Of a DNA stretch of 64,000 nucleotides, positions 32,461-63,120 are shown in pieces. Position numbers and translations under genes: made by a program. The notes beneath the pieces are model-generated. The model was given only the letters and a program-made list of their open reading frames with translations, was not told the origin of the DNA and did no database searches. Within the stretch, counting starts at the first letter, position 1. Every line of letters starts with the position of its first letter. Origin of the DNA: Octopus sinensis. Lineage: Eukaryota. The stretch lies in NCBI RefSeq assembly GCF_006345805.1, contig NW_021834409.1, positions 1,650-65,649 of the forward strand. Direction: 5' to 3'.

Positions 32461-32700
32461 ATGGAGCCGTACGCAGCACAAATAATAGAAATCACTGACG
32501 ACACACATTCAAACTAAATGAACCTTTGCTACAAAAAATTCTTATGGCAAAAAATGTCATTGACAAAAAAGTCATGGTTCTTTCAGTTGTCGGCGCTTAC
32601 AGACAAGGAAAATCGTTTCTCCTTAATTTTTTCCTCAAATATCTCTCCGCAAAAGTACTCTCAGCTTAAGATGAGACCATAGGACAAAAAAAATTGGTTC
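32461..32700 (+). pseudogene. ATL: Atlastin N-terminal fragment (GTPase P-loop)
   Basis: DD(H)TFKLNEPLLQKIL...KKVMVLSVVGAYRQGKSFLLNFFLKYL, with one missing base after GACGAC. Homology stops after a probable 28-nt intron. Confidence 0.75.
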
Positions 32701-32769
32701 CATAAATGTCGTGTATTTGCAAACGTGCCGTCATTATTACCAATTACGGATGTTTGATGAAGAGATTAT

Positions 32770-33880: not shown

Positions 33881-35039
33881 AACTGGAGGACCAATTTTTA
33901 GTTTATTTTCCAATAAATTATTAGTCATCTCTCTCCATTAATGGTTAGGTTAGCATTCTCCTTGTAGGACTATTAATTTATTATTTTTGAGATGGGGAAA
34001 AATTAAGATGCAATATTAAGTCATTAATCGACTAAGAAATAAAAAAGGAATTCATAAACAATTGATTTGGCGTAAATCCAATCAGGCGTATAAAGTAAAG
34101 TTTTTGGAATGGTCAAGTCAATCAACAGACCTCAATCCAATCAAATATTCATGGAAAATAAAATACTAAAGGAGACAGATTAAATGGTAAAAATAAAAAG
34201 ATATAAATGATGAAGGTGAAAAAACGATTAAATTATTGTCAAAATAAAACCAATTCAATTACAGAATATCCTAGATTATAAGAACTTCTGTAAATCAACA
34301 ATATATTTAATCAATTTTAAACACAAAATAAAGATTGAATCATCAATAAAAAAATATGATTAACAAAACAATCACCAACAACAAAAAGAATTAAGGATTC
34401 TTGGTAATTATTTAATACATTAGGTTTTCCAAATAAAATTAATTTTAATAATGACTAATGTTTAATAATTTAATACAAATCAAGATATTAATTGTCACAG
34501 GTTGGATAATGCCCTGGGTTAGATAATACCCCCTTGAAATTTTTTTTTAGTTCTTAATATATTTCAAATCAAAGAGAAATAGTCATTGGCAGATAGCCAG
34601 AGTATTGCCTCTGACTATTGCTATAGATATTCTTTCGATTAAATACCGGTGCTCACACGGGTCGCCGGTAACCCTTTCGATTAATGAGGCAATGCGCTGG
34701 AGTAGGGTCCGAGTAGAAGGCCCCTGTATTCCTGACGTCTCAATGAATGATTAGAGACATTTTTATAAGTGTTTAAAAATACAAATGATTTTAATTATAT
34801 TAATAGTCATTTTATTGTTTCTTGCTAAATGACACTTTATTCATCGAATATATCATTCGTTTATTTGTATTTTTAGTTTATTTTTAATGCTAAAATTATA
34901 GCATAAAGTTTTGTATTTATTTATTACATTTTTCTCCGCTATTTTTGCGTTATTGCGCATAGTTTATAAGATTTAACTAATGCATTTTATCAAATATGAC
35001 TTTTATTGGTTGGAAATTTTTGTTTACAATAGCGGAATT

Positions 35040-35890
35040 ACATAAAATCTAAAGCTCTTTATATAGGAAATTTTAATGCAATTTTATGTAAAATTTGTGG
35101 TGACCGTTCATCTGGAGTTCATTACGGAGTCGCAACATGTGAAGGTTGCAAGGTACTTTGTAGATTAACGTTTCCTTGCATTTAGTCTTTTTTCCGCAGG
35201 ACATTGGAGTGACCCTGGTAATCATTCGAGTCCATTTTAGGTGGAACTGGCCAATTGCAGTCATCCGTTTATTGGCTTTTGTTCTTATATTGAATTCAAC
35301 TTTTATTTCAAAGAAAATGAGGATTTTTCCAAAATTCTTGTAGTTCAGTCAGGAGATGAGGTTTTGGAGCATTTTGTTGATATTTGGTTTTTTGTTGTAT
35401 TTTTATTTTTAGTACAAAGTGCGACGTGAATTTAGAGCCGGACTTTGTGAATTGGAGATTTTAAATTGAGAGAAATTTAAATTAAGAGCGACGAGTTTGT
35501 AACTTGCAGTGGTGACTCGGAGACCAGGAGAAACACTGTCAGGTCGTGGATAACTTCGGAAGTAGTTTTTGATTAACTTTCGAGAGTTATATGTTGTGTT
35601 GAGATTAAATAAATGCATTGGATGAAGATTAAATAAACGATGAAATGAATTCAAATTAACTTGCAAAATAAAATTTATCCATGATATTTACCAGTAATCA
35701 AATTTAATAAATCTTCAAACAATTTAAAAAATAGAATAAAAATAAAATATTAATATAAAAAAGATTGAAATAAGAAATAAAAATTAACACAAAAAGCACA
35801 ACACAAGAAAAGAAAATAACATGCGTGACACGTAATAATTTATTGTAGTTAATTCGATAATTTAAAACTTTTAAAAATTAAATAAATAAC
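35040..35890 (-). repeat. Unclassified interspersed repeat; partial second copy at ~47030-47260
   Basis: TTGCAAAATAAA.TTTAT.CA.GATATTT.ACCAGTAATCA and CAACACAAGAAAA...AATTTATTGTA.TTAATTCGATAA blocks occur in both places in the same orientation. Confidence 0.5.
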
Positions 35891-36339
35891 ATTTAATAAT
35901 GTGATTCTGTTTGAATTCAGCTAGGAACAAAAATTCAGGTGGTTTATATTAATGGAGAGTAGGTATCTGATATATTTTCATCAAATAAAACAAAAAATAA
36001 AATTTTCTAAACATTATCCTTTCAATCTACTTTTGAAAAAATGACAGAATCTCTTACCATATGGAGTGAATCAAAAAAAGTTGTTTAAGTTTGTAGAACA
36101 CATAAGCGAAAATTATTTACAAGTCTTTTATCTATGACAAGATGATTATAATCAAAAAAGTTGCCAAAATTTGTCATTAACCACTCATATGTATTACTAA
36201 ATCGAACAGCAGATCATCAGTAATTGAATACTAAGAACAATACCAGACACAAAAACTTCGCAGAAATACAGAGGAAATTTTAATGGAAAAAAATCTATAA
36301 ATGGGATGCAACTTGCTCAGATACTTTTTCCGAACAAAA

Positions 36340-36610
36340 TCTTCCTCCCTCAGCTGTCGCAGTTGGCCCTGCTTCTTGCAGAGCAGAAGAATTAAAGATT
36401 TCAAAGTACACCAATCTCTCGGAACGCTATCTGTTTACCCCGATCGCCGTGGAGACCTCTGGCGTAATCGGTGACAGGTCACTCATTTTCCTCAAAAAGC
36501 TGGGTCGTCTGATTTCTGGCAAGAAAAACGACACGCGTGAGTGTGGATGGCTCCTTCAGAGGATTTTCCTTGCCATTGTACGTCGAAAATGTTTCTCCAT
36601 CTACGAGTCC
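36340..36610 (+). mobile_element. CRE-like 3' fragment
   Basis: KISKYTNLSERYLFTPIAVETSGVIG...RECGWLLQRI.LAIVR. Confidence 0.85.
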
Positions 36611-37704
36611 TCTTGTTAACTCTCTTTTCTCTCTGTTTTCTTTTAAGAAATAAATTGTATATAAAAAATCTATAAATGAACTAGAAATAAAACACAAAAC
36701 AAAATTAGAATAATAAAACGAGAATTATTACTTTTTTACTTTTTTTAATTGTCAAAATTGTTTAATTGATTTTTAGATTTAACTGATTATATTTTTGATA
36801 AAATTTTGAACTTAGTTTATTTGATAATATCAATTTGTTTTTTAAGCTTTGACTAATGATATTTATAGCTTTTAATTAGTTTATTCTCATTTTTTAAATA
36901 ATAACAAACAAGGTTGTAACATTAAATTAAAAAACGCTCTTAGAAGCGTTCTCAATAAAAATAGCCAGTGATGTCTTTTGTAAGAGAAAATAAATAAATA
37001 AATTTATACAGTCGAACCTTGCCCCAACAAAAACCCCGCCTTGGGGCACAATCGATTTTTGGGGCGATTTTATTTTTTAATACATTTTTCATCAATAATT
37101 TCCAAATTTGGAAATTATCAAAACCCCACTATGGGGCACTTAACTAATTTATTTTAATATGTGACATGGTTTGCGTGATGCCTATGGGCCGCGTGATACC
37201 TGACATGACCTTGAAGGTTAACTTAATGTCAATATTATATTGTAATTAATATTAAACTTCAAAGAATAATAACTTGTTAATTATTTTTTAAGTCTGGACA
37301 TTGGCACAATCGAAATTTCGCTCATCGAATTTTTTATCTATTAAATTTAAATGTTTAAACTACCTCAACGCGATTGTTTGATAAAATACTGATAATTCCT
37401 CACAAAGATTGGTCATTTCACGATTCTTGAATTCAGTCCCATTATCGGACTGAAGAAATTGACACGGACAATTTAAGAAAAATAATGATATGAGGTTTTT
37501 ACAAACTTCATTTGAGGACTTAGTGTAGAGCGGCCTCGCAAATGCAAATCTATAAAAATTGTTAAAAAACTAACCTGCTATATACGTCAATGACCGTTAA
37601 AATCCATTTAAAATTTTTATTTATAGTAGAAAAACTTTTCAGATCTATAAGATCTATCTGAAATCTTTCATTTGGGCAAGATGCAAAGACATGGTTATTT
37701 TATC

Positions 37705-40053: not shown

Positions 40054-40329
40054 CGGATCTATATCTCCAATCTAGGATTTAAAAAAGTTAAAACTTTTAA
40101 GGGTCGCGCAAATTTACAAATTTCACAGTTTCGAATGACTTTTTGAATAATCTCATTTTTAACTGTGAAATATCGTTGTCGACATTCATACTCAATTTTG
40201 TTAACTCCTCCATGCGAGAAGTCATGCAAACTTTTAGCAACGATCTCCATTTCGGGTTCATTGTCTAGACAAATCACTAGCTTGTGATCTGAATTAGCAC
40301 ATTTAAGATACAATCTATACATTGCTTCC

Positions 40330-40609
40330 CAGGACTGTCGCAAACCCGGGTTCCGCCAGTGCGCTGGCTGAAGAGACAAAGATGACGAAATACCGGTGTA
40401 TTTCGGACGCTTTTGAGTTTGCCCCCCTCGCCTTCGAAACCTCTGGAATCGTCGGAAAGGCTGCGACTCAACTCCTCACCGCCATTGGTAGAAAAATCTT
40501 CACAAAAACAAACGACCGGAGGGAGACGAGCTGGCTGTTCCAGCGAATCTCGGTTGCTGTGCTCCGCGGAAACTGCCACTCAATACGCAGCGCGGCATCG
40601 TTGAGCTGA
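40330..40609 (+). mobile_element. CRE-like 3' fragment
   Basis: AEETKMTKY...FAPLAFETSG...RETSWLFQRISVAVLRGN. Confidence 0.85.
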
Positions 40610-41399: not shown

Positions 41400-44171
41400 C
41401 GAATTTTATAATGGAATCGGGACAGAGGACAAAACAACGATATAAGAAACGTATGGTGGGAGCGAAATATAATGAAAGAAGACTCCAAGACGATGGAAAC
41501 TCTTCGGATAGTTGGGAGGGATCCCTCTATCTGTTATGGGTGTAATAAGATCAACACCAGGAAATGTGGCGTTTACTGTTCAATGTGTAATAAATTCTGG
41601 CATATTAGCTGCGCGCACCTTACCAAAGCCGCAGTGAAATTACTCCGGCGCTGGAGCTGCCACTGTTGTGGCTTTACTCGAAATCGCGGCTTCGCAGCAC
41701 CAGTCTCCTTCGCTTCATGAACCCAAATCAGAACACTATATTCTCAAAATTTCCAACTTACGGAAATCTAAGAAGATACCATTACGTATCCCTAAACAGG
41801 CTCGGATCTCAGCGGCAAACTGCTTGTGCGATCTTATCACTGATGCGCTAAGCTCCGGGGGGGACCATTCTTGGATCCGTCTCCTCTCTTTTGCACCTTG
41901 TGTGTTTGGACAAGCAATTGATGGTTCAGTACAAAAGAAGAGTCTCTCGGCTGCCATTAAGTCGAACTCTGCGAGATTGGATGTCTCATGGATTGATTTC
42001 GATTGTGAAGCGACCAATTACCAAACGTGCATCACGGAAAAATCCCCCCGTGGTTCAAAACCCAAGTTAGTCGTAAACTCATGGATGGCGACATCCGTGC
42101 GGCAGTTCGGGTCCTTTCGTCCGCTGATTCACTTGCTGAATCTACTGCCGAGACTTTGGAACACCTCAAAAACAAACATCCGATGCCCCCAGATGACTTA
42201 CGGGAGTTTCCCACACGAGAGAATGCAATTATACTGTCAATTTCTGATGATGAAATTTTGAAGGGATTAAATCTTTCAGACCGAGTAGCAGTGGGGGATT
42301 TGATGGTCTCCGGCCGAGTCATATAAAGGACATGATTCCCCGATTGACTATGGAGACTGGAATCCGCCTGATCAAGTGTATTACCAAGCTTGTCGAACGG
42401 ATTGTCAATGCTGAGATTTCAGGCTTTGCAAGGGATCTACTTTTCTGTTCACACCTTATTGCTTTCCGAAAGAACGATGGAGGAGTCCGCCCCATTGCAG
42501 TCGGTAATGTCTTCCGGAGGCTCGCATGCAAAATTGTAGCCCGAAGAGTCTGTCCCCGTGTTGCCGCTGAATTATCTCCAGTCCAACTGGGAGTTGGTGT
42601 TTCCAACGGATGTGAAGCTGCTGTCCACGCGACAAGAGCTTTTTTTTCACCTGACACAAGACATTCCCCAATTCCTTTGCGGTGAAGCTGGATATCTCAA
42701 ACGCGTTCAACAGTCTGAGAAGGGACTGTATGCTGGAATCGTGCTCGCAGCGTACCCCAGAGATCATGAGTCTGGCTCACCTTGCTTACGGGTCCGAAAG
42801 TTCGCTTGTCTTTGACAAACACATTGTCCGTTCACGGACTGGAGTCCAACAAGGTGACCCTCTTGGGCCCTTACTATTCGCTCTGTCAATCGACGAGGTG
42901 GCTCGTAATGTAAAGACACCTCTCAACCTTAGTACCTTGACGATGCCACTATTGGTGGCCCTGTTGATGTCGTCTTGGATGAGTTATATAAAATTGTTCC
43001 TGCCCTGGCAAAAATGGGGCTGATAATCAACACCAAAAAAACTGAGATCATAAATATCTCAGTCCCAATTCAAGACTTTGGCTTAGTATTGGAAAAGATT
43101 TCAGAAATCTTGCCAGACACAAAACAAACACGCCTCAACGATGTTTATTTTCTTGGTGTCCTTTCGGAGAGTCCGAAGTGCAAAACCACCTCAGAGCTAA
43201 GAGTGTCGAAATGTCCCGTTTTACTGAACGCCTCTCTCTACTTGACTCCCACACGGCCTTTTTCCTCCTCAAAAATTGCATCCACGTGCCCAACTGTTAT
43301 ATTTATTGAGATGCTCGCCCTGCTTTATACAAGATGAAATATTGCATTCTATCGATGATACGTTAAGATTGTGTGCCGAGTTGATCCTAAATGTCCGTTT
43401 CGATATGATGGGGGTGGACCCAGTGTAAACTACCTCTTAATTCTGGCGGAGCTGGCCTAAGATCCGCCCTGGACCTTGCCCTCCCAGCTTTCCTGTCCTT
43501 TCACTCATCCTGCCGAAGGCTATCCTTGGAGATTCTACATAAATCCCCCGAATCTTCTTTGGACAGGCCTTTTGAAGATGGATGTATGCTGTGGAAGGAA
43601 TCAGGATTAAAATTCCCGATCCAAACATCACTCCAACAGAGCTGGGACAAATTACGCTGCGAATTCACCGCAGACAACCTGGCAATGAGGCTCGACCAGC
43701 ACCGCCTCGCCTGCTTACGCTCTGCAGCTGTGCCACACTGGGTCATGGCTGAATGCTATGCCAATTGCTGGCCTCGGAACATTATTAGAGGATGACTGCA
43801 TGCGTATCGGTACTGCACTGAGACTCGGACTTGACATCTGCGAACAACATCGTTGTAGATGTGGAAAAACGGTTGACGTCAAAGGTGTACACCCACTCTC
43901 TTGCAAACGAAGTGCTGGCCGAGCTCCTCGCACTCCGCTATTAACAATGTTATCTTAAGAGCTCTTGAGTCGGCGGGCTTCCCTCGATCCTAGAGCCAGT
44001 GGGCTTAGATCGTGGAGATGGGAAAAGACCCGATGGAATGACCACTTTTCCCTACTCCTGTGGAAAATCGTTGGTTTGGGATTCAACGTGTGTTGACACC
44101 CATTCCAAAACTAATATGATCTCTTCTGCTGTTTCTCCACGTGCCCAAACTGTTATATTTATTGAGATGCT
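41400..44171 (+). mobile_element. Long CRE-like non-LTR retrotransposon (PHD-like finger, RT, CCHC, RLE), 3'-truncated and frameshifted
   Basis: C..C...C..C...WH..C...W.C..C; RIPKQAR; GGVRPIAVG..FRRL; KLDISNAFNS; GVQQGDPLGPLLF; YLDD (shifted); CRCG...HPLSC; KRPDG...WDSTCVD. Confidence 0.9.
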
Positions 44172-44519
44172 AATTTTAGGCAAAGGGATGGACCTCAGTA
44201 GATCGCCACTATACGTGGCTTTCGTATGTACAGTTCCCATGCCAGTATATGTCGTTTGCATATAATTTAGCACAAAGCTCAGTGAAAATGCAAGTCAACC
44301 TGGTGTAACAACAGTTATTAGTGTTATCAACGACACCAAGCCAGTAGCAGCATAAAAGCATAAATTTGCTATACAAGAGCTTCGAACAATATCGTTGCAG
44401 CCAGTCAAGATTCTAACTTAGAGGCGTTCAGTTATTATCTTTCAGACGATAGCTTCGCACCACTGACTTTTCAGTCAAGTGCATGAACCAAATGTCTGAC
44501 TCTGCAGTTCATTACGTAA

Positions 44520-45900
44520 TTTGCAGAATTACTGTGGCAACGAATAAATGAATGGGACTGTGAAGACTATGGAAATGACATTGTTGTTGATTGGACAGAG
44601 TTTGACTACGACCTAGAAGGCATAGTGAAAGATGTTTTTGACACTACAGTTGGCTCGAAAGTATTAAAGGAAAGGGACTATAATCTTAACTCTCCAATAA
44701 TTTTAGATGACCTTGACCTCCTAACTGGTGACACCAAGGCATTGATGAGCCTCAACCAAGGGAACTTGAGAACTCATTACAATAGCAGGAGACTAAGTGA
44801 GTTGATTCCACACAACTCAATTATAAAAAGTGAGAATATACACAAGGTGATCTTTGGCAAGGTCATCTCGCACGGTCACACAGAAGGGAATTGCCGAGTG
44901 TACAAGTCAAAGATTAGGGACATTGTGATTAGACCATTTAGGAAGAACCAAAAGTCATTTGAACTGGTGAGAACATTTTACAACTCGTCAATGCAGATGG
45001 GGGGCACAGGGGTCTTCGATGACTACATGAAACAGGCGAACGGTAAGCTTCTCAACCTCACAGAGAACACTGATTTTGTTATTTGGTACAAAGACCTCTT
45101 ATTTTGGAAGTTGATTACATTGTTAATGAATACTCAAGACAGCGATGAAGTCACGAATATTTTGAACAATTGTGCATCGATCAAATACCTTGAGGAAATC
45201 AAAGAGTTCATCTGTGATCCATCTGGTACGATCACTTTGATTGCAAGGGACCAAAGACAGTACGTCATCACGCCGAGTTGTGTATTACTACCTGACCATC
45301 AGCTGGTTTTGACACGTTCACTGGTTCTAATGATAAAAGATGTTTTGCAATCACGAGTAAACACCTTGATAATCAAAAATGGAACAATTACCAGAGACAT
45401 GAATCCACATACCAAGTTTTTGATGTGATGGATAGAGCATTCGGGTTCAGAGATGTGATTTCCCGATCACACAAGATTTTCCAAAATACATTGTATTATT
45501 ACTCCGATGCACCATTTTTATTCACGATTGACGATGACCTTAAAGGTGTTAATTTAACTGAACAAATTGTTTGTTGGAACGGGCAGGCAGGTGGGTTGGA
45601 GGGCCTGAGACAGAAGGGCTGGTGTATAGTTTCGCTTTTGATGATACACCATGAGAAAGAGAACAAAAGGAATGCATCGGTGAGAATCCTCGCCCAGGGT
45701 GATAACCAAATAGTGTGTGCAACATATAGAGTAGCTGGCTACCCTGACACACCTGAGTGGGATAATGAAGCTGATAGTATATGCTCACATATCAAAAGGC
45801 TGATAGAAGACATCAGGTCAGGTGCCAACAAACTTGGATTGAGAATTAAAGAAGAGGAAACTTGGGCGTCAACCTCCTTCCTGGTGTATGGGAAAATTAC
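44520..45900 (+). other. L: Endogenous viral element: rhabdovirus-like (Mononegavirales) L polymerase, internally deleted
   Basis: DYNLNSP at 44676; motif A LDNQKWNNYQR at 45365-45397; motif B GGLEGLRQKGW at 45590-45622; motif C AQGDNQ at 45692-45709; ends at YGK. Confidence 0.95.
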
Positions 45901-45919
45901 GCTTAAAAAATTAAATTCT

Positions 45920-46627
45920 AATTCTATATGTGCCTCCAATCAAGTGAGCCACATATCTCACGTGTTTAAAGTTTGAGAATAGTATGCACCCAATCTGAGC
46001 ACAGATCTCTAATCATTCGCTTTAACATATGAAACTTTTTACGAACACCAGCTATCCTGAGAGAAATTTCGGAGAGAACCAGCTACTAGATGGCTCGATT
46101 AGTATTTCGCCCCTATACCCAGCTTCGACAATCGATTTGCACGTCAGAACCGCGATAGACCTCCACCAGTGTTTCCACTGGCTTCATCTTAACCAGGTAT
46201 AGTTCGCCATCTTTCGGGTCTTAACGCATTAGCTAACACTCCCTAATAAACCGTAGTTACAATTAGGGGCGTATGTTGCAGGTTTAACACCCTCACATCC
46301 AGTTACTTTCATTACGCCGCATGGAATAACTCCATTAGACTTGCTAATACGGTAATCTCCTTGGTCCGTGTTTCAAGACGGGTCGGATAGAACACCCATG
46401 CATGTTAATCATCCAAAAGCTATCCTCAATACTCACCAACAAGCTGCTAGAATCATTACCCTAACAATAAACAGCATACACAGCCATCAAAAGGGCACAT
46501 TAAAACTAGCAACCAGTTAGAACACTCATTACAGCTGCTTTGCGTCCCAACTGTAACGCAAAGCGTCAAGGCTCTATCCGCTTCCTTCTAAACGGTTTCA
46601 CGCACTTTTAACCCTTTTCTCAAAGTT

Positions 46628-46664
<37 letters not shown>
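45920..46664 (-). rRNA. 28S: Isolated 28S (LSU) rRNA fragment, D1 end through D3 region; pseudogene
   Basis: Reverse complement contains CGATAGCGAACAAGTACCGTGAGGGAAAG, CCCGTCTTGAAACACGGACCAAGGAG, GACCCGAAAGATGGCGAACTA, CCATCTAGTAGCTGGTT and TATTCTCAAACTTTAAA. No other rDNA in the window. Confidence 0.95.
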
Positions 46665-46744: not shown

Positions 46745-46942
46745 CAAAATACCAAAAAATATCAAAATACCAAAAAATATCAAAATACCAAAAAATATCA
46801 AAATACCAAAAAATATCAAAATACCAAAAAATATCAAAATACCAAAAAATATCAAAATACCAAAAAATATCAAAATACCAAAAAATATCAAAATACCAAA
46901 AAATATCAAAATACCAAAAAATATCAAAATACTAAAAAAGAT
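46745..46942 (+). repeat. 18-bp minisatellite (CAAAATACCAAAAAATAT), 10 perfect copies plus 1 variant
   Basis: Direct count; explains the repetitive ORFs at 46706-46991. Confidence 0.95.
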
Positions 46943-47313
46943 CAAAATAAACAAAAATATACTAAATATAATAATTTTAAAATCTAAATGAATGAAGATT
47001 AAATAATTGAAAAAATGAATATAAATACACTTGCAAAATAAACTTTATTCAAGATATTTTACCAGTAATCAGTTTAATTAATCTTCAAACAAATAAAAAA
47101 ACGAAAATTTTAAAAATACAACATTGATAGCAAAGTAAAATTAAATAAAAATTAACAGCACAAACACCAACACAAGAAAATAATATAACGTGGACTTAAT
47201 GTAATTAATTTATTGTATTTAATTCGATAAATCAAGAACATTTAAAAATAATAAATAAAATTTAATTTCACCGTCTATTAGATGAACCAAGCAGTTTGAA
47301 TGGACCGACTACT

Positions 47314-55520: not shown

Positions 55521-56295
55521 GAAAGAGGGAACAACTGATAGTGCTTATCCTGATTTCCATGGTAAAAGTGGAATTTTAATTGACTTCTGATTTCGCAAGA
55601 ATTTTATTGAAAAAAATAAAGTGAGTGCAACCTGAAGGAAATCAGAAAGCAAAAATTAATAATTTTAGGAAATGCTTTAAAGATTTTTGTTAATAAATTG
55701 TAAGAATATATAAAAGTAGTTAAACATCCCTCTTAATACATAAAAAAGTCAAAGGCAAACTCTTAAAGACGACATTCTAACTTTACTCGATAAAGAAACA
55801 TAATTCAGGCATTAATGATATCATTTATTTAATAAGCTTACAAATGTAAAGGAAAACCTAGACAGATTTCTAAAGCTAAGTGAAATAAGGAATTTTACAG
55901 CACAGGTTGACATTGTGTTTTCAAACACTTCCCCGAGTGTATTAAAAAGCAAATCAACATACACAAAACTTTTCCGAACTAAACAAATTAGAAGAAAATT
56001 ACATTTTTAGACGGTAAAGTTATAGCTAACTTGTAAACTTGTTGAACAATCTTACAAATCATCACTAAATACCATGATTGAGACTGCTTAAATTAAGAAG
56101 AGAGGATTGAACTGTATGTGTTTGTTGATTTAACATAGAAACGATTGTTTCCAAATTTCGAAGATTATCAGTCTCATAGAGACTATGAAGTTCTCACATA
56201 AGCATTAAAACGGAAGAAAACATTTGCTAGGTAAAATCTAAACTATTTCGATTGTTGAAAATATGTTCTACTATAAGAATCAGAAACAGATAGAC

Positions 56296-56378
56296 GCACA
56301 AGTGGCCGAGTGGTTAAGGCGGTAGCCTAGAAAGCTATTGGGATTCATCCCGCGCAGGTTCGAATCCTGCCTTGTGCG
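56296..56378 (+). tRNA. tRNA-Ser: tRNA-Ser (anticodon AGA)
   Basis: GCACAAG/CTTGTGC acceptor stem, D arm GCCGAGTGGTTAAGGC, anticodon loop CT-AGA-AA, long variable arm, GGTTCGAATCC T arm, followed by TTTT. Confidence 0.95.
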
Positions 56379-57136
56379 TTTTATTATTTCAATATTAATT
56401 TTATTTTATTATTGCATTTTTAAAATTAATTTGCCTGCGACATGAGTGCCTTAAACATTCTGAAAAACATAAATGATGGCCATATCTCAGGTACCGTTAC
56501 TAAACACATTCATCTCCCACACTCTGCTGTGATCACCATTCCATTTTTATTATAAAACATATCCCATATTTTGGACAGCCTCGACTATCCATGTTCTCAA
56601 GATAACTTTGTTTGACGACTCGTTTTTCATATAAAAACAATTTGAGCTTCATCAAAAAAGCTCAATACTATCTATCCACAAGCAAGATATATAAGCTAAA
56701 AATTCGTTATCTTATTTTGTACTAAACAAATCATATTAAATCTATGCACATGATAAGAATCACCAATAGACAAGGCAATTGGAACTCAAAAAAATGGCAC
56801 GGAAAATAGTCCAACTGATACCCAGAGTATTCTGAGTTATGCAGAAATGAACGTAAGTTGAGATAAAACACAGACCTAACAAAAAATATTCAATAATAGA
56901 CAATGAATAAAACAAAAAAGCACAAATGGAATGTTGCCAGTACACTATAATAACCAAAAAAGTGTCAATCTAAAAACTAGTGACCCAGCTGTGCTTGAGA
57001 GTGTAGAAATTACTTGTCCCTTCTGAACCTTCATCACCCTTCTAATCACAACACCTACTTTGGACAGACAACTAAAATTGTGGAATCTTCCCTTACTACT
57101 TATTCGTAATAATTATATATATAAGTAGAATTAAGA

Positions 57137-58176
57137 CTAAAAAGCAAAATCATCACAAAAAACTAAATAAATCCTTTTAGCCAACTCCGTGCCCAACCTC
57201 CTCTTACTTTCCAGGACTCCTGCCACCCTCCGAACCTACAATATTAACCCCCCAAACCTCGATAGCTGCCAATCTATCCACCGCATCAACCGCACTGCAC
57301 TCCCAACACAAATCCACGACTGATCTCACCGTCGGAAACTCCTCCATGATACACAACGACAAATCACGTGACACTCCTGGAATTTTCTCGAGGACCTTCC
57401 CCCAACTCTGACTCCATTTGTTCTCCACGGTCCCCCAATTGTTCGTATCGGATATATAGGCGCCAAAACAAGTTCGTAATTTTTCCATTTCTAACCTGGA
57501 AATTTGAGGATAAAATTGACACTTTTTTGGGGCTTCGGCTATTGATTTTGTGATTTGACGAGTCAAAGTTGCCGCGTCTTTTTGACCACTTGCAAAATAA
57601 ATTGATAGAAAGTTCATTTTTAAAAGTAAAGTGTCTATTTTTTGCTACAAATAGGAAATGAATTTTACTTGATCTCTGTCAGTAATTGACTTTTTCTTAT
57701 CATTTCTAATTATTTATAATTATATTATATATACTTTATAACAATAATAATAATTTTAGAAGAATTAAATAGATATTTAAATTGTTCAATATGCATTTCG
57801 ATCTCGTTGTTGTTATTTATAATATTACAAAAATCGGTCAAATTAAAATATAAAAGAACAAAATCCTCCAATTTATAACTCCATTTGAGATCCTAATAAG
57901 TATAATCAACATGACCAACCTTGTATGTTTGTCCACAGTCGAGGGGAGTCTTCCTTTGCCATTGAATGACTTTATGTGCTCCTGAATGAGAGAAATCTAT
58001 CATTTCTACTCCACAAATAAGCATTTCTTCCTTTATTAGAGCCCGCATTTCGCTTTCTATGTTTTCTGAGACCATTATTTGCATGTACTACATCAGTTCA
58101 TGTTTATTACCTTAAGGCACTTGGTTAAATCTAGTGATTTCTTTAGCTCGTTTATATATATCTTATTTGTAGACAT
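57137..58176 (-). CDS. EME1: Crossover junction endonuclease subunit EME1-like, 295 aa, 7 exons
   Basis: Introns at 58088-58110, 57893-57919, 57706-57734, 57645-57668, 57496-57522 and 57236-57257 give an 888-nt open CDS. Motifs KCLK|YMQI, QWQRK, ITKSIAEAPKK, IPGVSR...IMEEFPT, VRRVAGV..KRRLGTELAKRIY. Confidence 0.85.
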
Positions 58177-58444
58177 TGATGGTCCCACCTCGATCAAAAA
58201 TTTAAATATATTTATTTATTAATAATTTATAATACATCATTGAAAAATATATTATTTTAAATTAAAGTTAATATATAATTGATAATTGGGGAAAGAAATT
58301 TGAACACGTAGTTTTCATTTTTTGCAAGATTTTCATGATTCTTTAGGCCAAATTTTAGAAAAAAATTCATTTAATAAAAATTTAAATATTAATAAAATAA
58401 TTAAAATATAATATTTTTTTAAATTATGTATAAAATAATTTTAA
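58177..58444. promoter_or_regulatory. Putative bidirectional promoter between head-to-head EME1 and SLC35B2
   Basis: 268-bp very AT-rich spacer between the two predicted start codons; inferred from geometry only. Confidence 0.5.
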
Positions 58445-59806
58445 ATGGATAAATCCTTGTTGTCACTAGGACAACTTTGTGTAAAACTGGTGGAGTATTT
58501 ATTGTTCTTATCTCCATTGCTAATAATCTCATATTTATCTAAAAAATATAATCTAAATAGTATAAAATGAAATATTAAAATTCAGAAATTAAATTTTTTG
58601 GAAAATGTTTTAAATTCATAAATTCAGAATTTGAAAAGCCAATTCTCGCCGAGAAAATTGTGGATCAATATGACACACAAAGCCAACAAAAAAACTCAAT
58701 AAAACATTTTATTATCTGCAGTTTTGGATTAATAGTAAATTAATTAAATATTAATTAATTAATTAGACATCTTATTTAATTTGGGGACTCATGCAGGAGA
58801 CAATAATGACTCACAACTACGAATTCTCAGGTCAACCACCAAAAAATATTTCTGATACAAAAAAGTTTGAAAACGTGCAATTTCTTGTTTTTATTAACAA
58901 AATATTCCCATTTTTATTCGGGTCGATTTGTACAATCATTTTTGTGAACGAAGGGAAAGGAGGAGCCCAGCTGTATAAATATTCGCTCTGTTCTCTCTCC
59001 AATATTGTCAGCAGTTATGCACAGTACGAGGCCCTCAAATACCTCATCTTCCCCCTGCAGGCCTGCCTTTGAGGTTATGGCGTAGGTCTTGGCCAAGTCT
59101 TGCAAGATTATTCCTGTTATGATTGTCGGGGGTGTTATGAATGGAACTAAATATACGCGGGAAAATTATGTTGAAGCTGTGTTTTTTATTATTGGGGTTT
59201 ATTGTTGTTTTTTGTTATTTATTTTTTTGTATATTTTTTAATTTTTTAGTTGGTTGTGTATTTTTTAAATACACGTATTCAAATTGGTGGCGGGAATTAT
59301 TTCTCTTTTGGTGGTTTAATTTTACTTTTTGTATATTTATTGTTTGATTCATTTACTTCTAATTGGCAGAAGAGAATATTCGACTCTACACAAGTCTCCC
59401 CCTTCCAAATGATGGTCCTCATTTCGTCTATTTATCTTTTATAGGCTGGAGTTAACTTTTTCTCTTGTTTACTAACATTTTTACAAATGTCAACAACTCT
59501 TGAACTCAGAGACTCGATATTGTTTCTGTACTCACACAAGACAATATTGAGCCATGTATTCATTCTGGCAGCCAGCGGATTGATAGGACAATTTTTTATT
59601 TTTCAAACAATCAAAAAAGTGTGATTTATGGAAATATTGTATAGTTAGGACCGCGGACTTTTTCCATGATTGTTTCCGTCAGGCAGGTCATTTCGGTCCT
59701 GCTCTCCTGTGTCATATTTGATCATGAAATTAATGTGTGGTCAGTCCTTGGAATTGGGATTGTCTTTTCAACTTTATTTTGGAGTGTTTGTCGTAAAAAG
59801 AAATAA
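58445..59806 (+). CDS. SLC35B2: PAPS transporter 1 (SLC35B2/slalom-like), 389 aa, 7 exons
   Basis: Introns at 58560-58585, 58735-58766, 59061-59085 (GC-AG), 59197-59249, 59415-59444 and 59619-59644 give a 1170-nt open CDS. Motifs SYLIWGLMQE, QFLVFIN, YSLCSLSN...QYEALKY..FPLQ|VLAKSCKIIPVM, FDSFTSNWQ, GQFFIFQTI, RQVISVLLSC. Confidence 0.9.
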
Positions 59807-60209
59807 TTAATTTTTTTTGTTTTATTTAAAATTGTTTGTTAACTATTCACGACTTTTAGTGGTTTTTAATTTTTTGTCTTACGTACTCACTTTAAATAAT
59901 TTTTCGCGTATTCCTTTTATAAAACTAGGGAAAAAAAGTATTGAATTAGTAATATGGATGGCGTTGTTTATTAACGACTATTTTAATATTTCTGAAATAC
60001 ACGCCTGAATATCATTTTTCTAAACTGTAGATTTCCCCCTGTATATGTTTTACATTTTCATTGACAAATTTTATCTTATATCGGAAACCAGAGTTACATC
60101 CAAGCATCGCTGATGTTCTGTCTGTGGTGAATGCAGTAGGATTGTGGCACAATATCCTATCATTAATAAGAATTGAAAATGTTTATTTTGTTTCAAAAAA
60201 CAATTAACA

Positions 60210-60901
60210 GCATCAATTGTGCCTGTCAACCCCACTCGGGCGATTGGCTTGACGCTTTGCCGATTTCCTCTGCTGGAATGTTGCTGGACGACGAATCTGT
60301 CCGCATCGGAATCTGTTTACGGCTTGGCATAGAGATTTGCCAGCCGCACCATTGCAGATGTGGACAACTCATTGACAGGAGAGGTTTACACCCTCTCTCT
60401 TGTCGCCTCAGTGCCGGCAGGATCCCCAGGCACGCCTCATTGAATGACGTTGTGAAGCGCGCGCTTAACGCCGCTGGATTTCCCTCGATGTTGGAACCGA
60501 TAGGACTAGACCGTGGAGATGGAAAACGCCCTGACGGGTCGACCTTATTCCCGTTCAGGAAGGGAATGGCACTCGTGTGGGATGTTACCTGCGTAGACTC
60601 ATTTTCTCCTTCATCGTTGGTCGACTCCGCTTCTCGTCCTGGATCTGCATCTGGCCTTGCCGAATCTAGGAAAACTGCTAAATATGCCTCTTTGACCGAT
60701 ACCTGCTGCTTCATTCCCCTGGCTTTCGAGACCAGTGGGATAATTGGACCCAAAGCCCTCAAACTCCTCTCAGAGATTGGTTCAATCATCTCGAGGAGGA
60801 GTCACGACAGTCGTGAAACGAGCTGGCTTTTTCAGCGGATATCGTTCGCGATATTACGTGGAAATTGCCTGTCCATCCGCTCGGCGACTCATCTAGTTTA
60901 G
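60210..60901 (+). mobile_element. CRE-like 3' portion (CCHC + RLE), open reading frame
   Basis: HSGDWL, CRCG..D..GLHPLSC, RHASLND, KRPDG, WDVTCVD, AESRKTAKY, FETSG, FQRISFAILRGN. Confidence 0.9.
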
Positions 60902-61069
60902 TTAACTTTTCTTCTCTAATTTTCTTGTTTCAAAAAAAAAATTAATTTATATTAACTATAAACTCGGTGAAGATTTTATCGTAATAATAATAATAATAAT
61001 CGTCTAAATAATAATAATCGTCTAGCCGATATTTGTGAAAACATCCTGGATCTTTGACCATCCACTCTC

Positions 61070-61180
61070 TTTTTTGTTAGACGGTATTGTTGATCTCTGT
61101 GTGCTCAAAGGACTTTCGTGAGACCCAATGGCTGTTTCAGTATCTTTCATTAGAACTGCCTAGCGATTCTATCCGTTGAG
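61070..61180 (+). mobile_element. CRE-like extreme 3' fragment
   Basis: KDFRETQWLFQYL...TA.RFYPLS; decayed version of the CRE terminus. Confidence 0.55.
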
Positions 61181-61719
61181 CTGTATGACCTTTTTTGTAA
61201 TTTTATTCGTTTTATTTTGACAATATTAATTAAATTTAAAATATCCGACCTTTTGTGTTTAACGTAATGAATAAATGAAAAAATTCTCGCAATCGTATGC
61301 GTTTTTTGCTTTTCCGATTCGATATAAAATCGTGTAAAAAATTTTTAATAATAGAAAATTAATGCTAGACTTGAATTAATCATTTATTTGCCAAACAATA
61401 TCTTTTTTGTCTTTAAAAAATCATTTAGTGTTCAGATAGTCTCGGAATGATTCGAAATTTGATAAAATAATACAAGATTCAGGAAAAAAATTCATGGTAG
61501 ATATGGATGTTTTACACCGTTTTTAACTATAAATTGAAATCCATAGTCTAAATAATTATCATAATTTAGTATTACGAAAAAAGAATTCGGTCAAATGTTA
61601 AAAGGGACGGGAAGCCGACACAATCGAGAAAAAATTATAGCGTACTATCATTGTATTTCAGAATTTTATAAGAAATACTATACCATTTTCAGTTCAATTT
61701 CGACAATAAAATGTTACTA

Positions 61720-62013
61720 AGTTCTTCTATAAGAAGAACTGATGGCGATCCTGTTTCTCCTCACTATTGCTTGAAACACTTTCTGGATGAGCCATCTCGT
61801 CTCCAGAGGATTGTGTGTTCTCCAGGTCTTGAGACGTCCAATACACTTGAGGAAGCACAACGACTTCTTCCCAATAGATCCCAGGGTTTCTACAGCAACC
61901 GGTCGGAAAACGTAACGATCGGTGAGCTTATCATATTTCTTCTTGATGTCCTCTGCTTTATCCGCAGCTGTGCCAGCATTGCAGGCACTTTCCAACATGT
62001 TTGTCTTGGACAA
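61720..62013 (-). mobile_element. CRE-like 3' fragment
   Basis: ADKAEDIKKKYDKLTDRYVFRPVAVETLG...ETRWLIQKV..AIVRRN. Confidence 0.85.
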
Positions 62014-62343
62014 TTTTTATGATTATTTTGATTATACAATATTCAATTTTGACATTTTCTATATCAATTTTAACAATTCTACATTCAATTTTGACAATGC
62101 GATAAACAATAGTGATATTTGTTGCATCAATTTAACACTACGATATTCAATTTTTAAATAGCAAACTAAATGAGATTAAATAAGATTTCTACTAATCCCA
62201 CTTAGTTTGTGATTAATCCCATTTAGTACGAGAAATGTGATATTTTATTAGTAATTTAATTATGATTTGTATTGTTCTAGCACTTAATACAGCTCAAAAG
62301 GAATGTTCCCATGTTAATAAAAGTATTAGAAACAGATTAAATG

Positions 62344-63120
62344 TTAGTTATCCTTAAAATAGTCCCTACTGCCATCAGGGGTGGGTATGATTGTGGGTCT
62401 ACCAGGTGTCCAATTGACGGGACATCCTTCACATTAGTACTCACCCAACCTTCTCCGTGCTTATCACTAATTGTATGGCCAGTAACAGTCTTAGTGTCTC
62501 ATCCACTGATCTGCCTGTTGGCATGTCATTAATCGTGATCTGCCTCACAATGCCCTTTCCGTCAATTATAAACAGTCCTCTGAATTTGTCCTCAGTTCAC
62601 ACAACCTGTAGGCGTCTCCGCTTTCTGACAGTACTCCATACGCCTTAGAGATGGACTGACTCCGGTCGGCCAATAATGGGATATTCATACGACCAAGCCC
62701 TCCAAGTTTTTTCTCACGTTTTGTCCTTTAATATTATTATTTTAATTATTAATAAATTATTTTTTAATTTTAAAATAATTTAGTATAATGTGGTGACCCA
62801 ATTTTCTGAATTTTTAATAAATAGGACAGTTAAAATGCAACTCAGACCATTCTAAATGAACGTGCTCAGTGTCAGTTGAACAGGCAATAAGCTGACAATT
62901 ATTGTTTATAAACTCTTCTCTTCTGTCGTTAAATGCGATTATTTCTGTGGGACAGACATATGTGCTAGCTGTGGTTAATAAATAGTTACAAGTCTCTTGG
63001 ATAGAAAAATAGAACGAGAAAATTCTTCAAAAATTGTTCGTTGTTTATCTGTTTGAAAGCACCGTCTACAACTGCAGTGCCCGCAAAGCTTGGAGCTGGT
63101 TTGCCTATCAATTGTGACAT
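62344..63120 (-). CDS. PRDX: Typical 2-Cys peroxiredoxin, 5 exons; one 1-nt deletion in exon 4 as assembled
   Basis: [10 protein letters not shown]...FFYPRDF|TYVCPTE...HLEW|TK...GGLG..NIPLLAD...YR|GLFIID...[10 protein letters not shown]...HGE|GCPVNW. Introns at 62965-62989, 62726-62847, 62580-62605 and 62427-62449; 193 aa if one T is restored at 62469-62470. Confidence 0.95.

What the first reader, a model, noticed from the sequence alone, without database searches (positions are those of the whole stretch)
57137..63120. Genome-wide ultrashort intron regime with degenerate donors and no polypyrimidine tract
In EME1, SLC35B2 and PRDX, 13 of 16 introns are 22-30 nt, and removing them gives full-length frames. 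Donors vary freely after GT (GTAA, GTTG, GTGT, GTCC, GTCT, GTTT). Several have a YTAAY/CTGAT branch-like motif within ~10 nt of the AG. PRDX introns (W|, R|G, GE|) match vertebrate PRDX1 positions as I recall them. This implies a spliceosome that recognises introns largely by length, as in the few known tiny-intron lineages. Some 3n introns lack in-frame stops (for example 57496-57522), so retention would escape NMD.
Basis: partly seen in the sequence, partly recalled or inferred. Interest (0 to 1): 0.8.

Follow-up and report, generated by a model that had tools for sequence, protein, structure and literature searches.

The report
Ultrashort introns in a parasite genome
Three neighbouring animal genes are interrupted by real but miniature introns (mostly 22-30 bases) with almost no splice-site consensus, a regime already published for dicyemid mesozoans, the most likely source of this DNA, and for myxobolid myxozoans.

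Summary
Homology-guided spliced alignment gives 16 introns in EME1, SLC35B2 (PAPST1) and a PRDX1/2-type peroxiredoxin. Thirteen are 22-30 nt (median 26); the others are 32, 53 and 122 nt.

All four PRDX introns lie at the same codon and phase as introns of 342-10,707 nt in a brachiopod and a coral. Three of them match a fish. Two SLC35B2 introns match a fish. These are therefore shrunken ancestral spliceosomal introns.

There is a weak A-rich spot about 8 nt before the 3' end.

- One donor is GC, not GT (59061-59085).
- PRDX also needs a 1-nt frame correction at 62469/62470.
- Only one 3n intron lacks a stop (57496-57522), and it is the least certain intron.

The regime is already published for Dicyema (2007, 2010, 2019) and for myxobolid Myxozoa (2014, 2026), reduced splice logos included. 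GC content (35.4%), LINE load and best protein hits favour a dicyemid, but the organism was not identified directly. "Genome-wide" and "recognised by length" cannot be tested from one window without RNA data. Interest is low.

The parts
57137..58176 (-). EME1-like gene, CDS with 7 exons, 295 aa
   Evidence: Human EME1 in the PDB at E 1.6e-8. Pfam EME1-MUS81_C at E 1.4e-10. The model is open-reading-frame consistent.
58088..58110 (-). EME1 intron 1, 23 nt, GTAATA..TGTAG, phase 0, CTGAT 5 nt from the 3' end
   Evidence: Has an in-frame stop if retained. It is the shortest GT-AG excision that keeps the frame open. There is no homologue alignment over this junction.
57893..57919 (-). EME1 intron 2, 27 nt (3n), GTTGGT..TTAG, phase 0
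   Evidence: Has an in-frame stop if retained. An 18-nt alternative also keeps the frame open.
57706..57734 (-). EME1 intron 3, 29 nt, GTATAT..TTAG, phase 2, 93% AT
   Evidence: Has an in-frame stop if retained. It is the shortest frame-preserving excision.
57645..57668 (-). EME1 intron 4, 24 nt (3n), GTAAAA..GTAG, phase 0, pyrimidine-rich 3' half
   Evidence: Has an in-frame stop if retained.
57496..57522 (-). EME1 intron 5, 27 nt (3n, no in-frame stop), GTGTCA..CCAG, phase 2. This is the least certain intron.
   Evidence: Retention would add 9 aa in frame. The PDB phmmer score against human EME1 is 37.6 bits with it removed and 31.2 bits with it retained.
57236..57257 (-). EME1 intron 6, 22 nt, GTTTGG..GTAG, phase 0
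   Evidence: Removal joins AAIEV to RRVAGVLESKRRLGTELAKRIYL. This aligns without a gap to human [28 protein letters not shown].
58445..59806 (+). SLC35B2 / PAPS transporter 1 gene, CDS with 7 exons, 389 aa
   Evidence: Pfam UAA over profile positions 2-306 of 311. Best database hits are bilaterian PAPST1, 36-44% identical. Two reference proteins give identical introns.
58560..58585 (+). SLC35B2 intron 1, 26 nt, GTATAA..TCAG, phase 1
   Evidence: Same position and phase as an intron of the fish (IERg|SGL) and chiton (ETAg|PGF) orthologues.
58735..58766 (+). SLC35B2 intron 2, 32 nt, GTAAAT..TTAG, phase 0, 94% AT
   Evidence: Same position and phase as the fish intron AGLQ|VSYLTWG.
59061..59085 (+). 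SLC35B2 intron 3, 25 nt, GC-AG (GCCTGC..GTAG), phase 0, only 44% AT
   Evidence: Exact removal gives FPLQ|VLAKSCK, against FPTQVLAKSCK/FPTQVLAKASK/FPHQVLAKAAK in the homologues. It contains an in-frame TGA. The GT alternatives all delete 18 or more conserved codons.
59197..59249 (+). SLC35B2 intron 4, 53 nt, GTTTAT..TTAG, phase 0, T-rich with a pyrimidine run of 7
   Evidence: Spliced alignment is contiguous across the junction. Composition.
59415..59444 (+). SLC35B2 intron 5, 30 nt (3n), GTCCTC..ATAG, phase 0, pyrimidine-rich
   Evidence: Has an in-frame stop if retained. The junction QMM|AGVN is contiguous with homologues.
59619..59644 (+). SLC35B2 intron 6, 26 nt, GTGTGA..ATAG, phase 0
   Evidence: The junction TIKK|LGPRTF is contiguous with homologues.
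62344..63120 (-). PRDX1/2-type 2-Cys peroxiredoxin gene, CDS with 5 exons, about 193 aa
   Evidence: 60-65% identity, full length. Pfam AhpC-TSA plus 1-cysPrx_C.
62965..62989 (-). PRDX intron 1, 25 nt, GTAACT..CTAG, phase 2 (RDf|TYVCP)
   Evidence: Same position and phase as introns in Lingula (1,038 nt) and Porites (10,707 nt). Absent from the fish.
62726..62847 (-). PRDX intron 2, 122 nt, GTCTGA..AAAG, phase 2 (HLEw|TKRE)
   Evidence: Same position and phase in the fish, Lingula and Porites.
62580..62605 (-). PRDX intron 3, 26 nt, GTTGTG..TCAG, phase 2 (AYr|GLF)
   Evidence: Same position and phase in the fish, Lingula and Porites.
62427..62449 (-). PRDX intron 4, 23 nt, GTTGGG..GAAG, phase 1 (KHGEg|CP), TACTAAT 7 nt from the 3' end
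   Evidence: Same position and phase in the fish, Lingula and Porites.
62469..62470 (-). Apparent 1-nt frameshift inside PRDX exon 4 (AIQ / SDKHGE)
   Evidence: The aligner needs a frameshift here. Both flanks match the conserved LRLVQAFQFTDKHGE. The only GT-AG alternative (20 nt) would delete 7 conserved residues.
58177..58444 (.). 268-nt AT-rich spacer between the divergently transcribed EME1 and SLC35B2 start codons
   Evidence: Read directly from the two gene models.

Best explanation
The segments are genuine U2-type (GT-AG) spliceosomal introns that have shrunk to about 22-30 nt. They sit in the nuclear genome of an animal in which this is the normal intron size. That animal is most likely a dicyemid mesozoan (Dicyema).

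Shown here:
- Excising exactly these segments restores conserved proteins.
- All four PRDX introns and two SLC35B2 introns occupy the same codon and phase as long introns in other phyla.
- The termini are GT (15) or GC (1) and AG (16).
- There is no donor consensus beyond GT.
- Most of them have no pyrimidine tract.

Inferred, not shown:
- The spliceosome defines each intron as one compact unit.
- It uses the GU, a branch adenosine about 8 nt before the 3' end, a (T/C)AG, the higher AT content of the intron, some exonic A-A-G context, and a tightly constrained 5'ss-to-3'ss distance.
- Unspliced transcripts are mostly neutralised, because 15 of 16 introns would introduce a stop or a frameshift if retained.
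For: Gene models and intron table.

Protein identity.

Intron position and phase conservation, tested on fetched gene loci:
- PRDX shares 3/4 positions with Amia PRDX2, 4/4 with Lingula and 4/4 with Porites.
- SLC35B2 introns 1 and 2 match the fish Nematolebias. Intron 1 also matches the chiton.

Signal statistics:
- Donor +3 is A6 T5 C3 G2; +5 is G in only 6/16.
- Acceptor -3 is T11 C3 A2.
- A at -9 in 11/16.
- YTRAY-like motif near the 3' end in 6/14 tiny introns, against 2.3 in shuffles (P 0.017).
- Intron AT is 75%, exon AT 63%.
- Mean pyrimidine fraction at -14..-3 is 0.55.

Retention consequences: 12 in-frame stops, 3 frameshifts, 1 silent.

A fourth gene (IMPDH, decayed) has six more introns of 23-26 nt.

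Published values match:
- Dicyema acuticephalum, 26.2 +/- 1.9 nt, verified against cDNA (PMC2222250).
- Dicyema sp., median 27 bp, two thirds under 30 bp, 4.9 introns per gene (PMC6543705).
- D. japonicum, GC 36.7%, 49% repeats rich in LINE ORF2 (PMC6736024).
- 5'ss reduced to 'GTa', 3'ss reduced to 'AG', and weak A residues as the presumed branch (PMC13644364).

The window has 35.4% GC and at least four elements with reverse-transcriptase matches, three of them LINE-type.
Against: - No RNA evidence was available, so splicing itself is inferred.
- The first four EME1 introns are supported only by reading-frame continuity, because no homologue aligns there. The AlphaFold model was too poor to help.
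- 57496-57522 could be coding sequence.
- One donor is GC with no compensating consensus.
- PRDX carries a frameshift and IMPDH several. Some of these loci may be decaying copies, or the assembly may contain indels.
- The source organism was not identified directly. No near-identical protein exists in the 5.8-billion-protein database.
- Four SLC35B2 introns have no counterpart in the fish, chiton or sea urchin orthologues.
Confidence: 0.85

Rival explanations
1. The splicing regime is the same, but the DNA comes from a myxobolid myxozoan (parasitic cnidarian), the other published animal lineage with introns under 30 nt.
For: Myxobolids have median introns of 22-27 bp and the same reduced splice logos (PMC13644364; PMC4986447). 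All four PRDX intron positions are also present in a cnidarian, so they do not discriminate between the two lineages.
Against: - T. kitauei and H. salminicola are about 29% GC, against 35.4% here.
- LINEs make up 0.07% of the T. kitauei genome, whereas LINE copies fill much of this window.
- T. kitauei proteins are in NCBI, yet none is among the top 120 hits for PRDX or SLC35B2.
- The best named SLC35B2 hits are all bilaterian, many of them spiralian.
Confidence: 0.08
2. The DNA comes from a third animal lineage with ultrashort introns that has not yet been described.
For: No protein identical or close to the three products is in the database. The organism was never identified directly.
Against: Every measurable property fits D. 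japonicum as published: GC content, repeat and LINE load, intron median, introns per gene, and splice logos. As far as I know the D. japonicum assembly has no deposited protein annotation, which would explain the missing self-hits.
Confidence: 0.06
3. The segments are not introns. They would instead be junk insertions or indels in dead genes, assembly artefacts, or DNA-level eliminated sequences like ciliate IES.
For: The window is rich in decayed genes and transposons, and there are 1-nt frameshifts in PRDX and IMPDH. Dicyemids are reported to carry circular or eliminated DNA (PMC6543705).
Against: - Six segments lie at exactly the codon and phase of orthologous introns in other phyla.
- All 16 end in AG and 15 begin with GT, rather than the TA..TA boundaries of IES.
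- The lengths cluster tightly.
- EME1 and SLC35B2 are otherwise intact.
Confidence: 0.02
4. For 57496-57522 only: the 27 nt are coding sequence, or an optionally retained segment, rather than a constitutive intron.
For: The segment is 3n with no in-frame stop, and it lies in a poorly conserved loop. GT-N(20-28)-AG strings are common by chance; one search lists 30 frame-preserving options at this junction.
Against: Removing it raises the match to human EME1 from 31.2 to 37.6 bits. Its length and pyrimidine-rich 3' half resemble its neighbours.
Confidence: 0.3

Closest known systems
Dicyemid mesozoan introns (Dicyema acuticephalum, Aruga 2007; D. japonicum, Ogino 2010 and Lu 2019; Dicyema sp., Zverkov 2019)
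   Same: - Median of 26-27 nt in a narrow distribution.
- About 5-6 introns per gene.
- Ancestral intron positions are kept.
- 5'ss reduced to GT(a) and 3'ss to AG.
- No pyrimidine tract.
- Genome about 36-37% GC and repeat- and LINE-rich.
   Different: Nothing measured here differs. Species identity is untested. Two details are not mentioned in the parts of those papers that I read: the GC-AG 25-nt intron, and four SLC35B2 introns at positions absent from three other phyla.
Myxobolid myxozoan introns (Thelohanellus kitauei, Myxobolus, Henneguya salminicola; Yang 2014, Hadjez 2026)
   Same: Ultrashort introns (median 22-27 nt), reduced splice logos, and weak A residues as the presumed branch site.
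   Different: Those genomes are about 29% GC with very few LINEs. T. kitauei peaks at 20-25 nt. No myxozoan protein is among the best hits here.
Paramecium and other ciliate tiny introns (20-35 nt; Jaillon 2008, from my own knowledge)
   Same: The length class is the same. Most retained introns would give a premature stop, which fits translation-coupled surveillance.
   Different: This window uses the standard genetic code and encodes metazoan genes. Depletion of stopless 3n introns cannot be assessed with 16 introns.
Bigelowiella nucleomorph (18-21 nt) and Stentor (15-16 nt) introns
   Same: Extreme miniaturisation with a very narrow length range.
   Different: The introns here are longer and more variable (22-32 nt, plus 53 and 122), and the host is an animal.
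Human ultrashort introns that use SPF45/RBM17 instead of U2AF (Fukumura 2021, from my own knowledge)
   Same: Short introns with truncated pyrimidine tracts, which suggests 3' splice-site recognition that does not depend on U2AF65.
   Different: The human examples are 43-56 nt and rare. Nothing about the splicing factors could be tested here.

Membership tests
U2-type GT-AG spliceosomal intron | GT (rarely GC) at the 5' end and AG at the 3' end | tested here: met
   15 GT, 1 GC and 16 AG. The aligner required these dinucleotides, so this row is not independent evidence on its own.
U2-type GT-AG spliceosomal intron | Exact removal restores a conserved, uninterrupted protein | tested here: met
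   SLC35B2 and PRDX junctions are gap-free against homologues. EME1 junctions 5 and 6 are covered by the human alignment. EME1 junctions 1-4 rest on the reading frame only.
U2-type GT-AG spliceosomal intron | Position and phase orthologous to introns in other species | tested here: met
   PRDX shares 4/4 with Lingula and Porites and 3/4 with Amia. SLC35B2 shares 2/6 with the fish and 1/6 with the chiton. SLC35B2 introns 3-6 are unmatched.
U2-type GT-AG spliceosomal intron | Branch-point adenosine upstream of the 3' splice site | tested here: inconclusive
   A at -9 in 11/16 introns (uncorrected P 0.003), and in 12/20 when the IMPDH introns are added. A YTRAY-like motif occurs in 6/14 tiny introns against 2.3 expected (P 0.017). 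The sample is small and many columns were tested.
U2-type GT-AG spliceosomal intron | Absent from mature mRNA | not testable with these tools
   No transcript data for this organism could be reached. No matching spliced protein is in the database.
Dicyemid ultrashort-intron regime | Median about 26-27 nt, with roughly two thirds or more under 30 nt | tested here: met
   Median 26; 13/16 are 30 nt or less; 19/22 are 22-30 nt with IMPDH included. Published values.
Dicyemid ultrashort-intron regime | About 5-6 introns per gene, at conserved positions | tested here: met
   16 introns in 3 genes gives 5.3 per gene. Positions are conserved for PRDX and partly for SLC35B2.
Dicyemid ultrashort-intron regime | 5'ss reduced to GT(a), 3'ss reduced to AG, no polypyrimidine tract | tested here: met
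   Published logos are described in PMC13644364. Exceptions: the 53-nt intron and four of the 14 tiny introns are pyrimidine-rich.
Dicyemid ultrashort-intron regime | Genome background of about 36.7% GC and about 49% repeats with many LINE ORF2 copies | tested here: met
   The window is 35.4% GC. It carries three LINE-type copies plus a fourth reverse-transcriptase-bearing retroelement, Tc1/mariner elements and an LTR-type integrase, compared.
Dicyemid ultrashort-intron regime | Sequence identity or phylogenetic placement with Dicyemida | not testable with these tools
   No eukaryotic nucleotide or rRNA reference collection was available.
Myxobolid myxozoan regime | AT-rich genome (about 29% GC) with very few LINEs, and closest proteins myxozoan or cnidarian | tested here: not met
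   The window is 35.4% GC and LINE-rich. No T. kitauei protein is among the top 120 hits. The named SLC35B2 hits are all bilaterian. This is indirect evidence.
Ciliate tiny introns under translational surveillance | Ciliate genetic code, and depletion of 3n introns without stops | tested here: not met
   The models contain no in-frame TAA or TAG and end at TAA or TAG, so the code is standard. The homologues are metazoan. 3n introns are 4/16, one of them stopless, which is too few to test for depletion.
IES-like DNA elimination | TA..TA boundaries, and presence in germline DNA only | tested here: not met
   The boundaries are GT/GC..AG.

The most novel reading that the evidence does not exclude
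There are two candidates.

1. The contig could come from an animal lineage other than dicyemids or myxobolids. That would be a third independent origin of introns under 30 nt.

2. Within a known lineage, the four SLC35B2 introns that have no counterpart in fish, chiton or sea urchin could be recent gains made under the tiny-intron regime. They include a 25-nt GC-AG intron with no donor consensus. That would show that new introns can arise and be spliced with almost no sequence signal.
Probability: 0.1. Interest if true: 0.6.

Novelty: already known. Interest (0 to 1): 0.2.

Why it matters
Biologically this re-finds a published peculiarity. Animal introns can shrink to about 22-30 nt and still keep their ancestral positions, while losing nearly all canonical splice-site information.

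Its practical value is for annotation. Gene finders with a minimum intron length of 30-40 nt will break every gene in such a genome. None of the three proteins is present in a database of 5.8 billion proteins.

Two open questions remain untested in these lineages: how a spliceosome pairs sites only about 25 nt apart, and whether stop-free 3n introns are selected against. A window like this gives concrete test substrates for both.

Tried and rejected
- A database search with the EME1 model found nothing at E <= 1e-3, so EME1 introns 1-4 could not be checked by homology.
- A single-sequence AlphaFold2 model of EME1 had pLDDT 42.5 and was not used.
- An exact-match look-up of a window ORF found no contig. 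The source organism therefore stayed unidentified.
I printed ORF concatenations but read them by eye instead of spending calls on them.
- Attempts to extend the intron sample failed for two genes. The proteasome beta gene gave only fragmentary alignments, scores 77-87. The nuclear-receptor exon could not be continued into a second zinc finger. Both look like gene remnants.
- IMPDH aligned only in two halves. It has three frame shifts (two found by the aligner, one at the junction of the two halves), one in-frame stop and about 100 residues missing. Its six introns are supporting evidence only.
- Gene loci for the Owenia, Lingula, Tubulanus and Asterias SLC35B2 proteins were not on record.
- A 20-nt GT-AG 'intron' that would repair the PRDX frame was rejected, because it deletes seven conserved residues whose codons are present in the shifted frame.
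- Rfam found no snRNA in the window, so no inventory of the splicing machinery is possible from here.

Full report
**What is in the window**

The window is 64 kb of AT-rich (35.4% GC) animal nuclear DNA. Much of it is occupied by transposons:
- LINE reverse-transcriptase and endonuclease ORFs at 2.4-5.1 kb, 16.6-18.8 kb and 38.2-40.1 kb.
- A further RT-bearing retroelement at 41.6-44.3 kb.
- Tc1/mariner transposase remnants.
- An LTR-type integrase.

The finding's span, 57137-63120, runs exactly from the stop codon of an EME1-like gene to the start codon of a peroxiredoxin gene. A PAPS-transporter gene (SLC35B2) and two retroelement fragments lie between them.

**Checking the observation**

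I first built the three models by eye from the frames. I then wrote a protein-to-genome spliced aligner. It allows GT or GC to AG introns of 15 nt or more, penalises GC, and allows frameshifts at a cost. I ran it with database homologues as references.

- With a fish PRDX2 it returned the same four PRDX introns: 62965-62989, 62726-62847, 62580-62605 and 62427-62449.
- With an annelid and a beetle PAPST1 it returned the same six SLC35B2 introns: 58560-58585, 58735-58766, 59061-59085, 59197-59249, 59415-59444 and 59619-59644.
- EME1 has six introns: 58088-58110, 57893-57919, 57706-57734, 57645-57668, 57496-57522 and 57236-57257.

The lengths are 22, 23, 23, 24, 25, 25, 26, 26, 26, 27, 27, 29, 30, 32, 53 and 122 nt. 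Thirteen of the 16 are 22-30 nt and the median is 26.

**Are the products real proteins?**

- The PRDX product aligns end to end at 60-65% identity with metazoan PRDX1/2. Both catalytic cysteine motifs are intact.
- The SLC35B2 product covers Pfam UAA positions 2-306 of 311. Its best hits are all annotated as adenosine 3'-phospho 5'-phosphosulfate transporter 1.
- The EME1 product is very divergent. Nothing in the large database scores at E <= 1e-3. It does match human EME1 chains in the PDB (E 1.6e-8) and Pfam EME1-MUS81_C (E 1.4e-10) over its C-terminal half.

**The strongest test: intron positions**

I fetched orthologous gene loci and determined their introns with the same aligner.

| Gene | Intron positions (lower-case = split codon) | Phases |
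|---|---|---|
| Window PRDX | RDf\|TYVCP, HLEw\|TKRE, AYr\|GLF, KHGEg\|CP | 2, 2, 2, 1 |
| Bowfin (Amia) PRDX2 | DYRg\|KYVV, HLAw\|TNT, AYr\|GLF, KHGEv\|CPAGW | 1, 2, 2, 1 |
| Lingula PRDX | YPLDf\|TFVCP, HLAw\|VNT, TFr\|GLF, KHGEv\|CP | 2, 2, 2, 1 |
| Porites PRDX | same four positions and phases as Lingula | 2, 2, 2, 1 |

All four window introns therefore coincide in position and phase with introns of 342-10,707 nt in a brachiopod and a coral. Three coincide with a vertebrate.

For SLC35B2, introns 1 and 2 match the two introns in the aligned coding region of a fish orthologue. Intron 1 also matches the single intron I mapped in a chiton orthologue. Introns 3-6 have no counterpart in the fish, the chiton or a sea urchin. 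Even so, exact removal is required to restore highly conserved transporter motifs.

This positional orthology is independent of the GT-AG constraint in the aligner. It rules out chance, junk insertions and IES-like elements for at least six of the segments.

1. Intron 59061-59085 begins with GC (GCCTGC). No GT alternative preserves the conserved ...YEALKYLIFPLQ|VLAKSCK... sequence.
2. The PRDX frame is not restored by the four introns alone. A 1-nt shift is needed at 62469/62470, where AIQ and SDKHGE, both matching the conserved QAFQFTDKHGE, sit in different frames. This is either an assembly indel or a very recent lesion.
3. Of the four 3n introns (27, 27, 24 and 30 nt), three contain in-frame stops. 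Only 57496-57522 does not, and it is the weakest intron. Its sole support is a 6.4-bit better match to human EME1 when it is removed.

Overall, retention of 12 introns gives an in-frame stop, 3 give a frameshift and 1 is silent.

**Signals**

- *Donor.* G1 16/16 and T2 15/16. After that, +3 is A6 T5 C3 G2, +4 is T8 A4 G3 C1, and +5 is G in only 6/16. There is no consensus beyond GT.
- *Upstream exon.* The last three exon positions lean towards A-A-G (10, 10 and 9 of 16).
- *Acceptor.* -3 is T11 C3 A2, and -5 is T in 11/16.
- *Pyrimidines.* The mean pyrimidine fraction at -14..-3 in the 14 introns of 32 nt or less is 0.55, against 0.48 in exons. Nine of the 14 have no pyrimidine run longer than 3. 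Four tiny introns have runs of 5-6, and the 53-nt intron has a run of 7. 'No polypyrimidine tract' is thus true of most, not all.
- *Branch-like features.* An A-rich column lies at -9 (11/16; 12/20 with IMPDH; uncorrected binomial P 0.003-0.008). A YTRAY-like motif with its A 4-14 nt from the 3' end occurs in 6 of 14 tiny introns, against 2.3 in composition-matched shuffles (P 0.017). Both are suggestive only at this sample size.
- *Composition.* Introns are 75% AT and exons 63%.

**Is it a regime?**

A fourth gene, an IMPDH copy at about 9.5-10.7 kb on the minus strand, adds six introns of 23-26 nt at junctions that are contiguous with human IMPDH2. That copy also has three frame shifts (two called by the aligner, a third at the junction of the two aligned halves), an in-frame stop and about 100 residues missing.

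Counting it, 19 of 22 introns in four genes are 22-30 nt. The other gene-like pieces in the window are remnants and could not be modelled: a proteasome beta exon, an atlastin-like exon and a nuclear-receptor zinc-finger exon. 'Genome-wide' therefore cannot be shown from this window. It rests on the literature.

**Comparison with what is known**

The phenomenon is published.
- Aruga et al. 2007 compared genomic DNA with cDNA in Dicyema acuticephalum. They found 16 introns of 26.2 +/- 1.9 nt at conserved positions (PMC2222250).
- Ogino et al. 2010 extended this to 40 D. japonicum genes (cited).
- Zverkov et al. 2019 report a median of 27 bp, two thirds under 30 bp, and 4.9 introns per gene (PMC6543705).
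- Lu et al. 2019 give the D. japonicum genome as 36.7% GC and 48.9% repeats, with many LINE ORF2 copies (PMC6736024).
- Yang et al. 2014 noted 20-25 bp introns in the myxozoan Thelohanellus kitauei (PMC4986447).
- Hadjez et al. 2026 surveyed 51 animal genomes and found such introns only in myxobolids and D. japonicum. [quoted passage not shown] They also found canonical U2 snRNA and U2AF in myxozoans (PMC13644364).

Everything measured here matches those descriptions.

**Which lineage?**

Direct identification was not possible. No eukaryotic nucleotide collection was available. No near-identical protein exists in the database, and no exact ORF is on record.

Indirect evidence favours a dicyemid over a myxobolid:
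- GC is 35.4%, against about 29% in T. kitauei and H. salminicola.
- The LINE load is heavy, against 0.07% LINE in T. kitauei.
- No T. kitauei protein is among the top hits, although its proteome is in NCBI.
- The named SLC35B2 hits are exclusively bilaterian, many of them spiralian.
- The single-base frame shifts are what one would expect from a partly long-read-derived assembly such as that of D. japonicum. This last point is inference.

**Mechanism**

Shown: canonical termini, exact excision needed for function, and ancestral positions.

Inferred: ordinary U2-type splicing by intron definition on a substrate close to the steric minimum. The GU, a branch A about 8 nt from the 3' end, a (T/C)AG, the AT contrast between intron and exon, and a narrow permitted 5'ss-to-3'ss distance would together replace the lost consensus. 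Stops or frameshifts in 15 of 16 retained introns would provide a fail-safe through premature termination.

That recognition is 'largely by length' is plausible but untested. The weak positional signals above show that length is not the only information available.

**Verdict**

The novelty is nil if the source is a dicyemid or a myxobolid. The residual novel readings (a third lineage; recent intron gains, including a consensus-free GC-AG 25-mer) have a probability of about 0.1.

Noticed in passing
window 44520-45973 (+): Two overlapping ORFs (302 and 226 aa) match the Mononegavirales L polymerase: Pfam PF00946 at E 2.8e-9 and 2.6e-54. The best PDB matches are the L polymerase chains 6ueb_A (rabies virus, from my own knowledge of the entry) and 5a22_A (vesicular stomatitis virus), at E 1e-46 to 1e-43. 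This is a fragmentary (about 1.4 kb) rhabdovirus-like endogenous viral element. It was not reconstructed.
   Followed up: partly
window 44171-44546 and 45705-46640 (-): Three non-contiguous fragments of eukaryotic LSU rRNA (Rfam model positions 359-1455 and 3005-3399). The middle 1.5 kb of the model is missing and the viral-like ORFs sit in its place. The fragments lie directly after a frameshifted RT-bearing retroelement (41.6-44.3 kb). This could be a rearranged rDNA remnant or an R-element insertion site.
   Followed up: no
window 62469-62470 (-): The otherwise intact PRDX gene has a 1-nt frame shift inside the conserved QAFQFTDKHGE motif. It is either an assembly indel or a very recent inactivation.
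   Followed up: partly
window ~9514-10700 (-): An IMPDH copy with six introns of 23-26 nt. It also has three frame shifts, an in-frame stop, and a clean loss of about 100 residues of the catalytic barrel (human residues about 226-326). Its GC content is higher than its neighbours'. It is a likely pseudogene, or an error-laden stretch of assembly.
   Followed up: partly
window 59061-59085 (+) and 10460-10485 (-): Two tiny introns with GC instead of GT at the 5' end and no compensating donor consensus. The IMPDH case could instead be a GT intron plus a 1-nt deletion.
   Followed up: partly
window 59061-59644 (+): SLC35B2 introns 3-6 lie inside the transporter core, at positions that are intron-free in the fish, chiton and sea urchin orthologues. 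They are either lineage-specific gains or differential losses elsewhere.
   Followed up: partly
window 32010-35182 (+): A cluster of isolated gene pieces with no completable gene: a helicase fragment (Helitron/Pif1-like by eye; weak Pfam helicase hits only) at 32010-32201; an atlastin/GBP-like exon at 32499-32666; a proteasome beta first exon at 32779-32847; a second proteasome-like piece at 33595-33786; and a nuclear-receptor first zinc-finger exon at 35033-35182, followed by a GT...AG segment of 33 nt.
   Followed up: partly
window 60173-60901 (+), 61720-62016 (-), 1557-1883 (-), 13516-13956 (+), 36284-36616 (+), 40307-40606 (+), 43969-44262 (+): At least seven copies of a conserved ORF module with no Pfam match (motif ...GDGKRPDG...WD.TC.D...). 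It sits at or near the 3' end of several of the retroelements in this window, and two copies lie between SLC35B2 and PRDX.
   Followed up: no
window 30171-31256 and 46745-46960: Two tandem arrays: a 94-nt unit in 11.4 copies (93% matches), and an 18-nt unit in 12 copies.
   Followed up: no
window 56295-56379 (+): An intact tRNA-Ser(AGA) gene about 750 nt from the 3' end of the EME1 CDS (57137), on the opposite strand.
   Followed up: no
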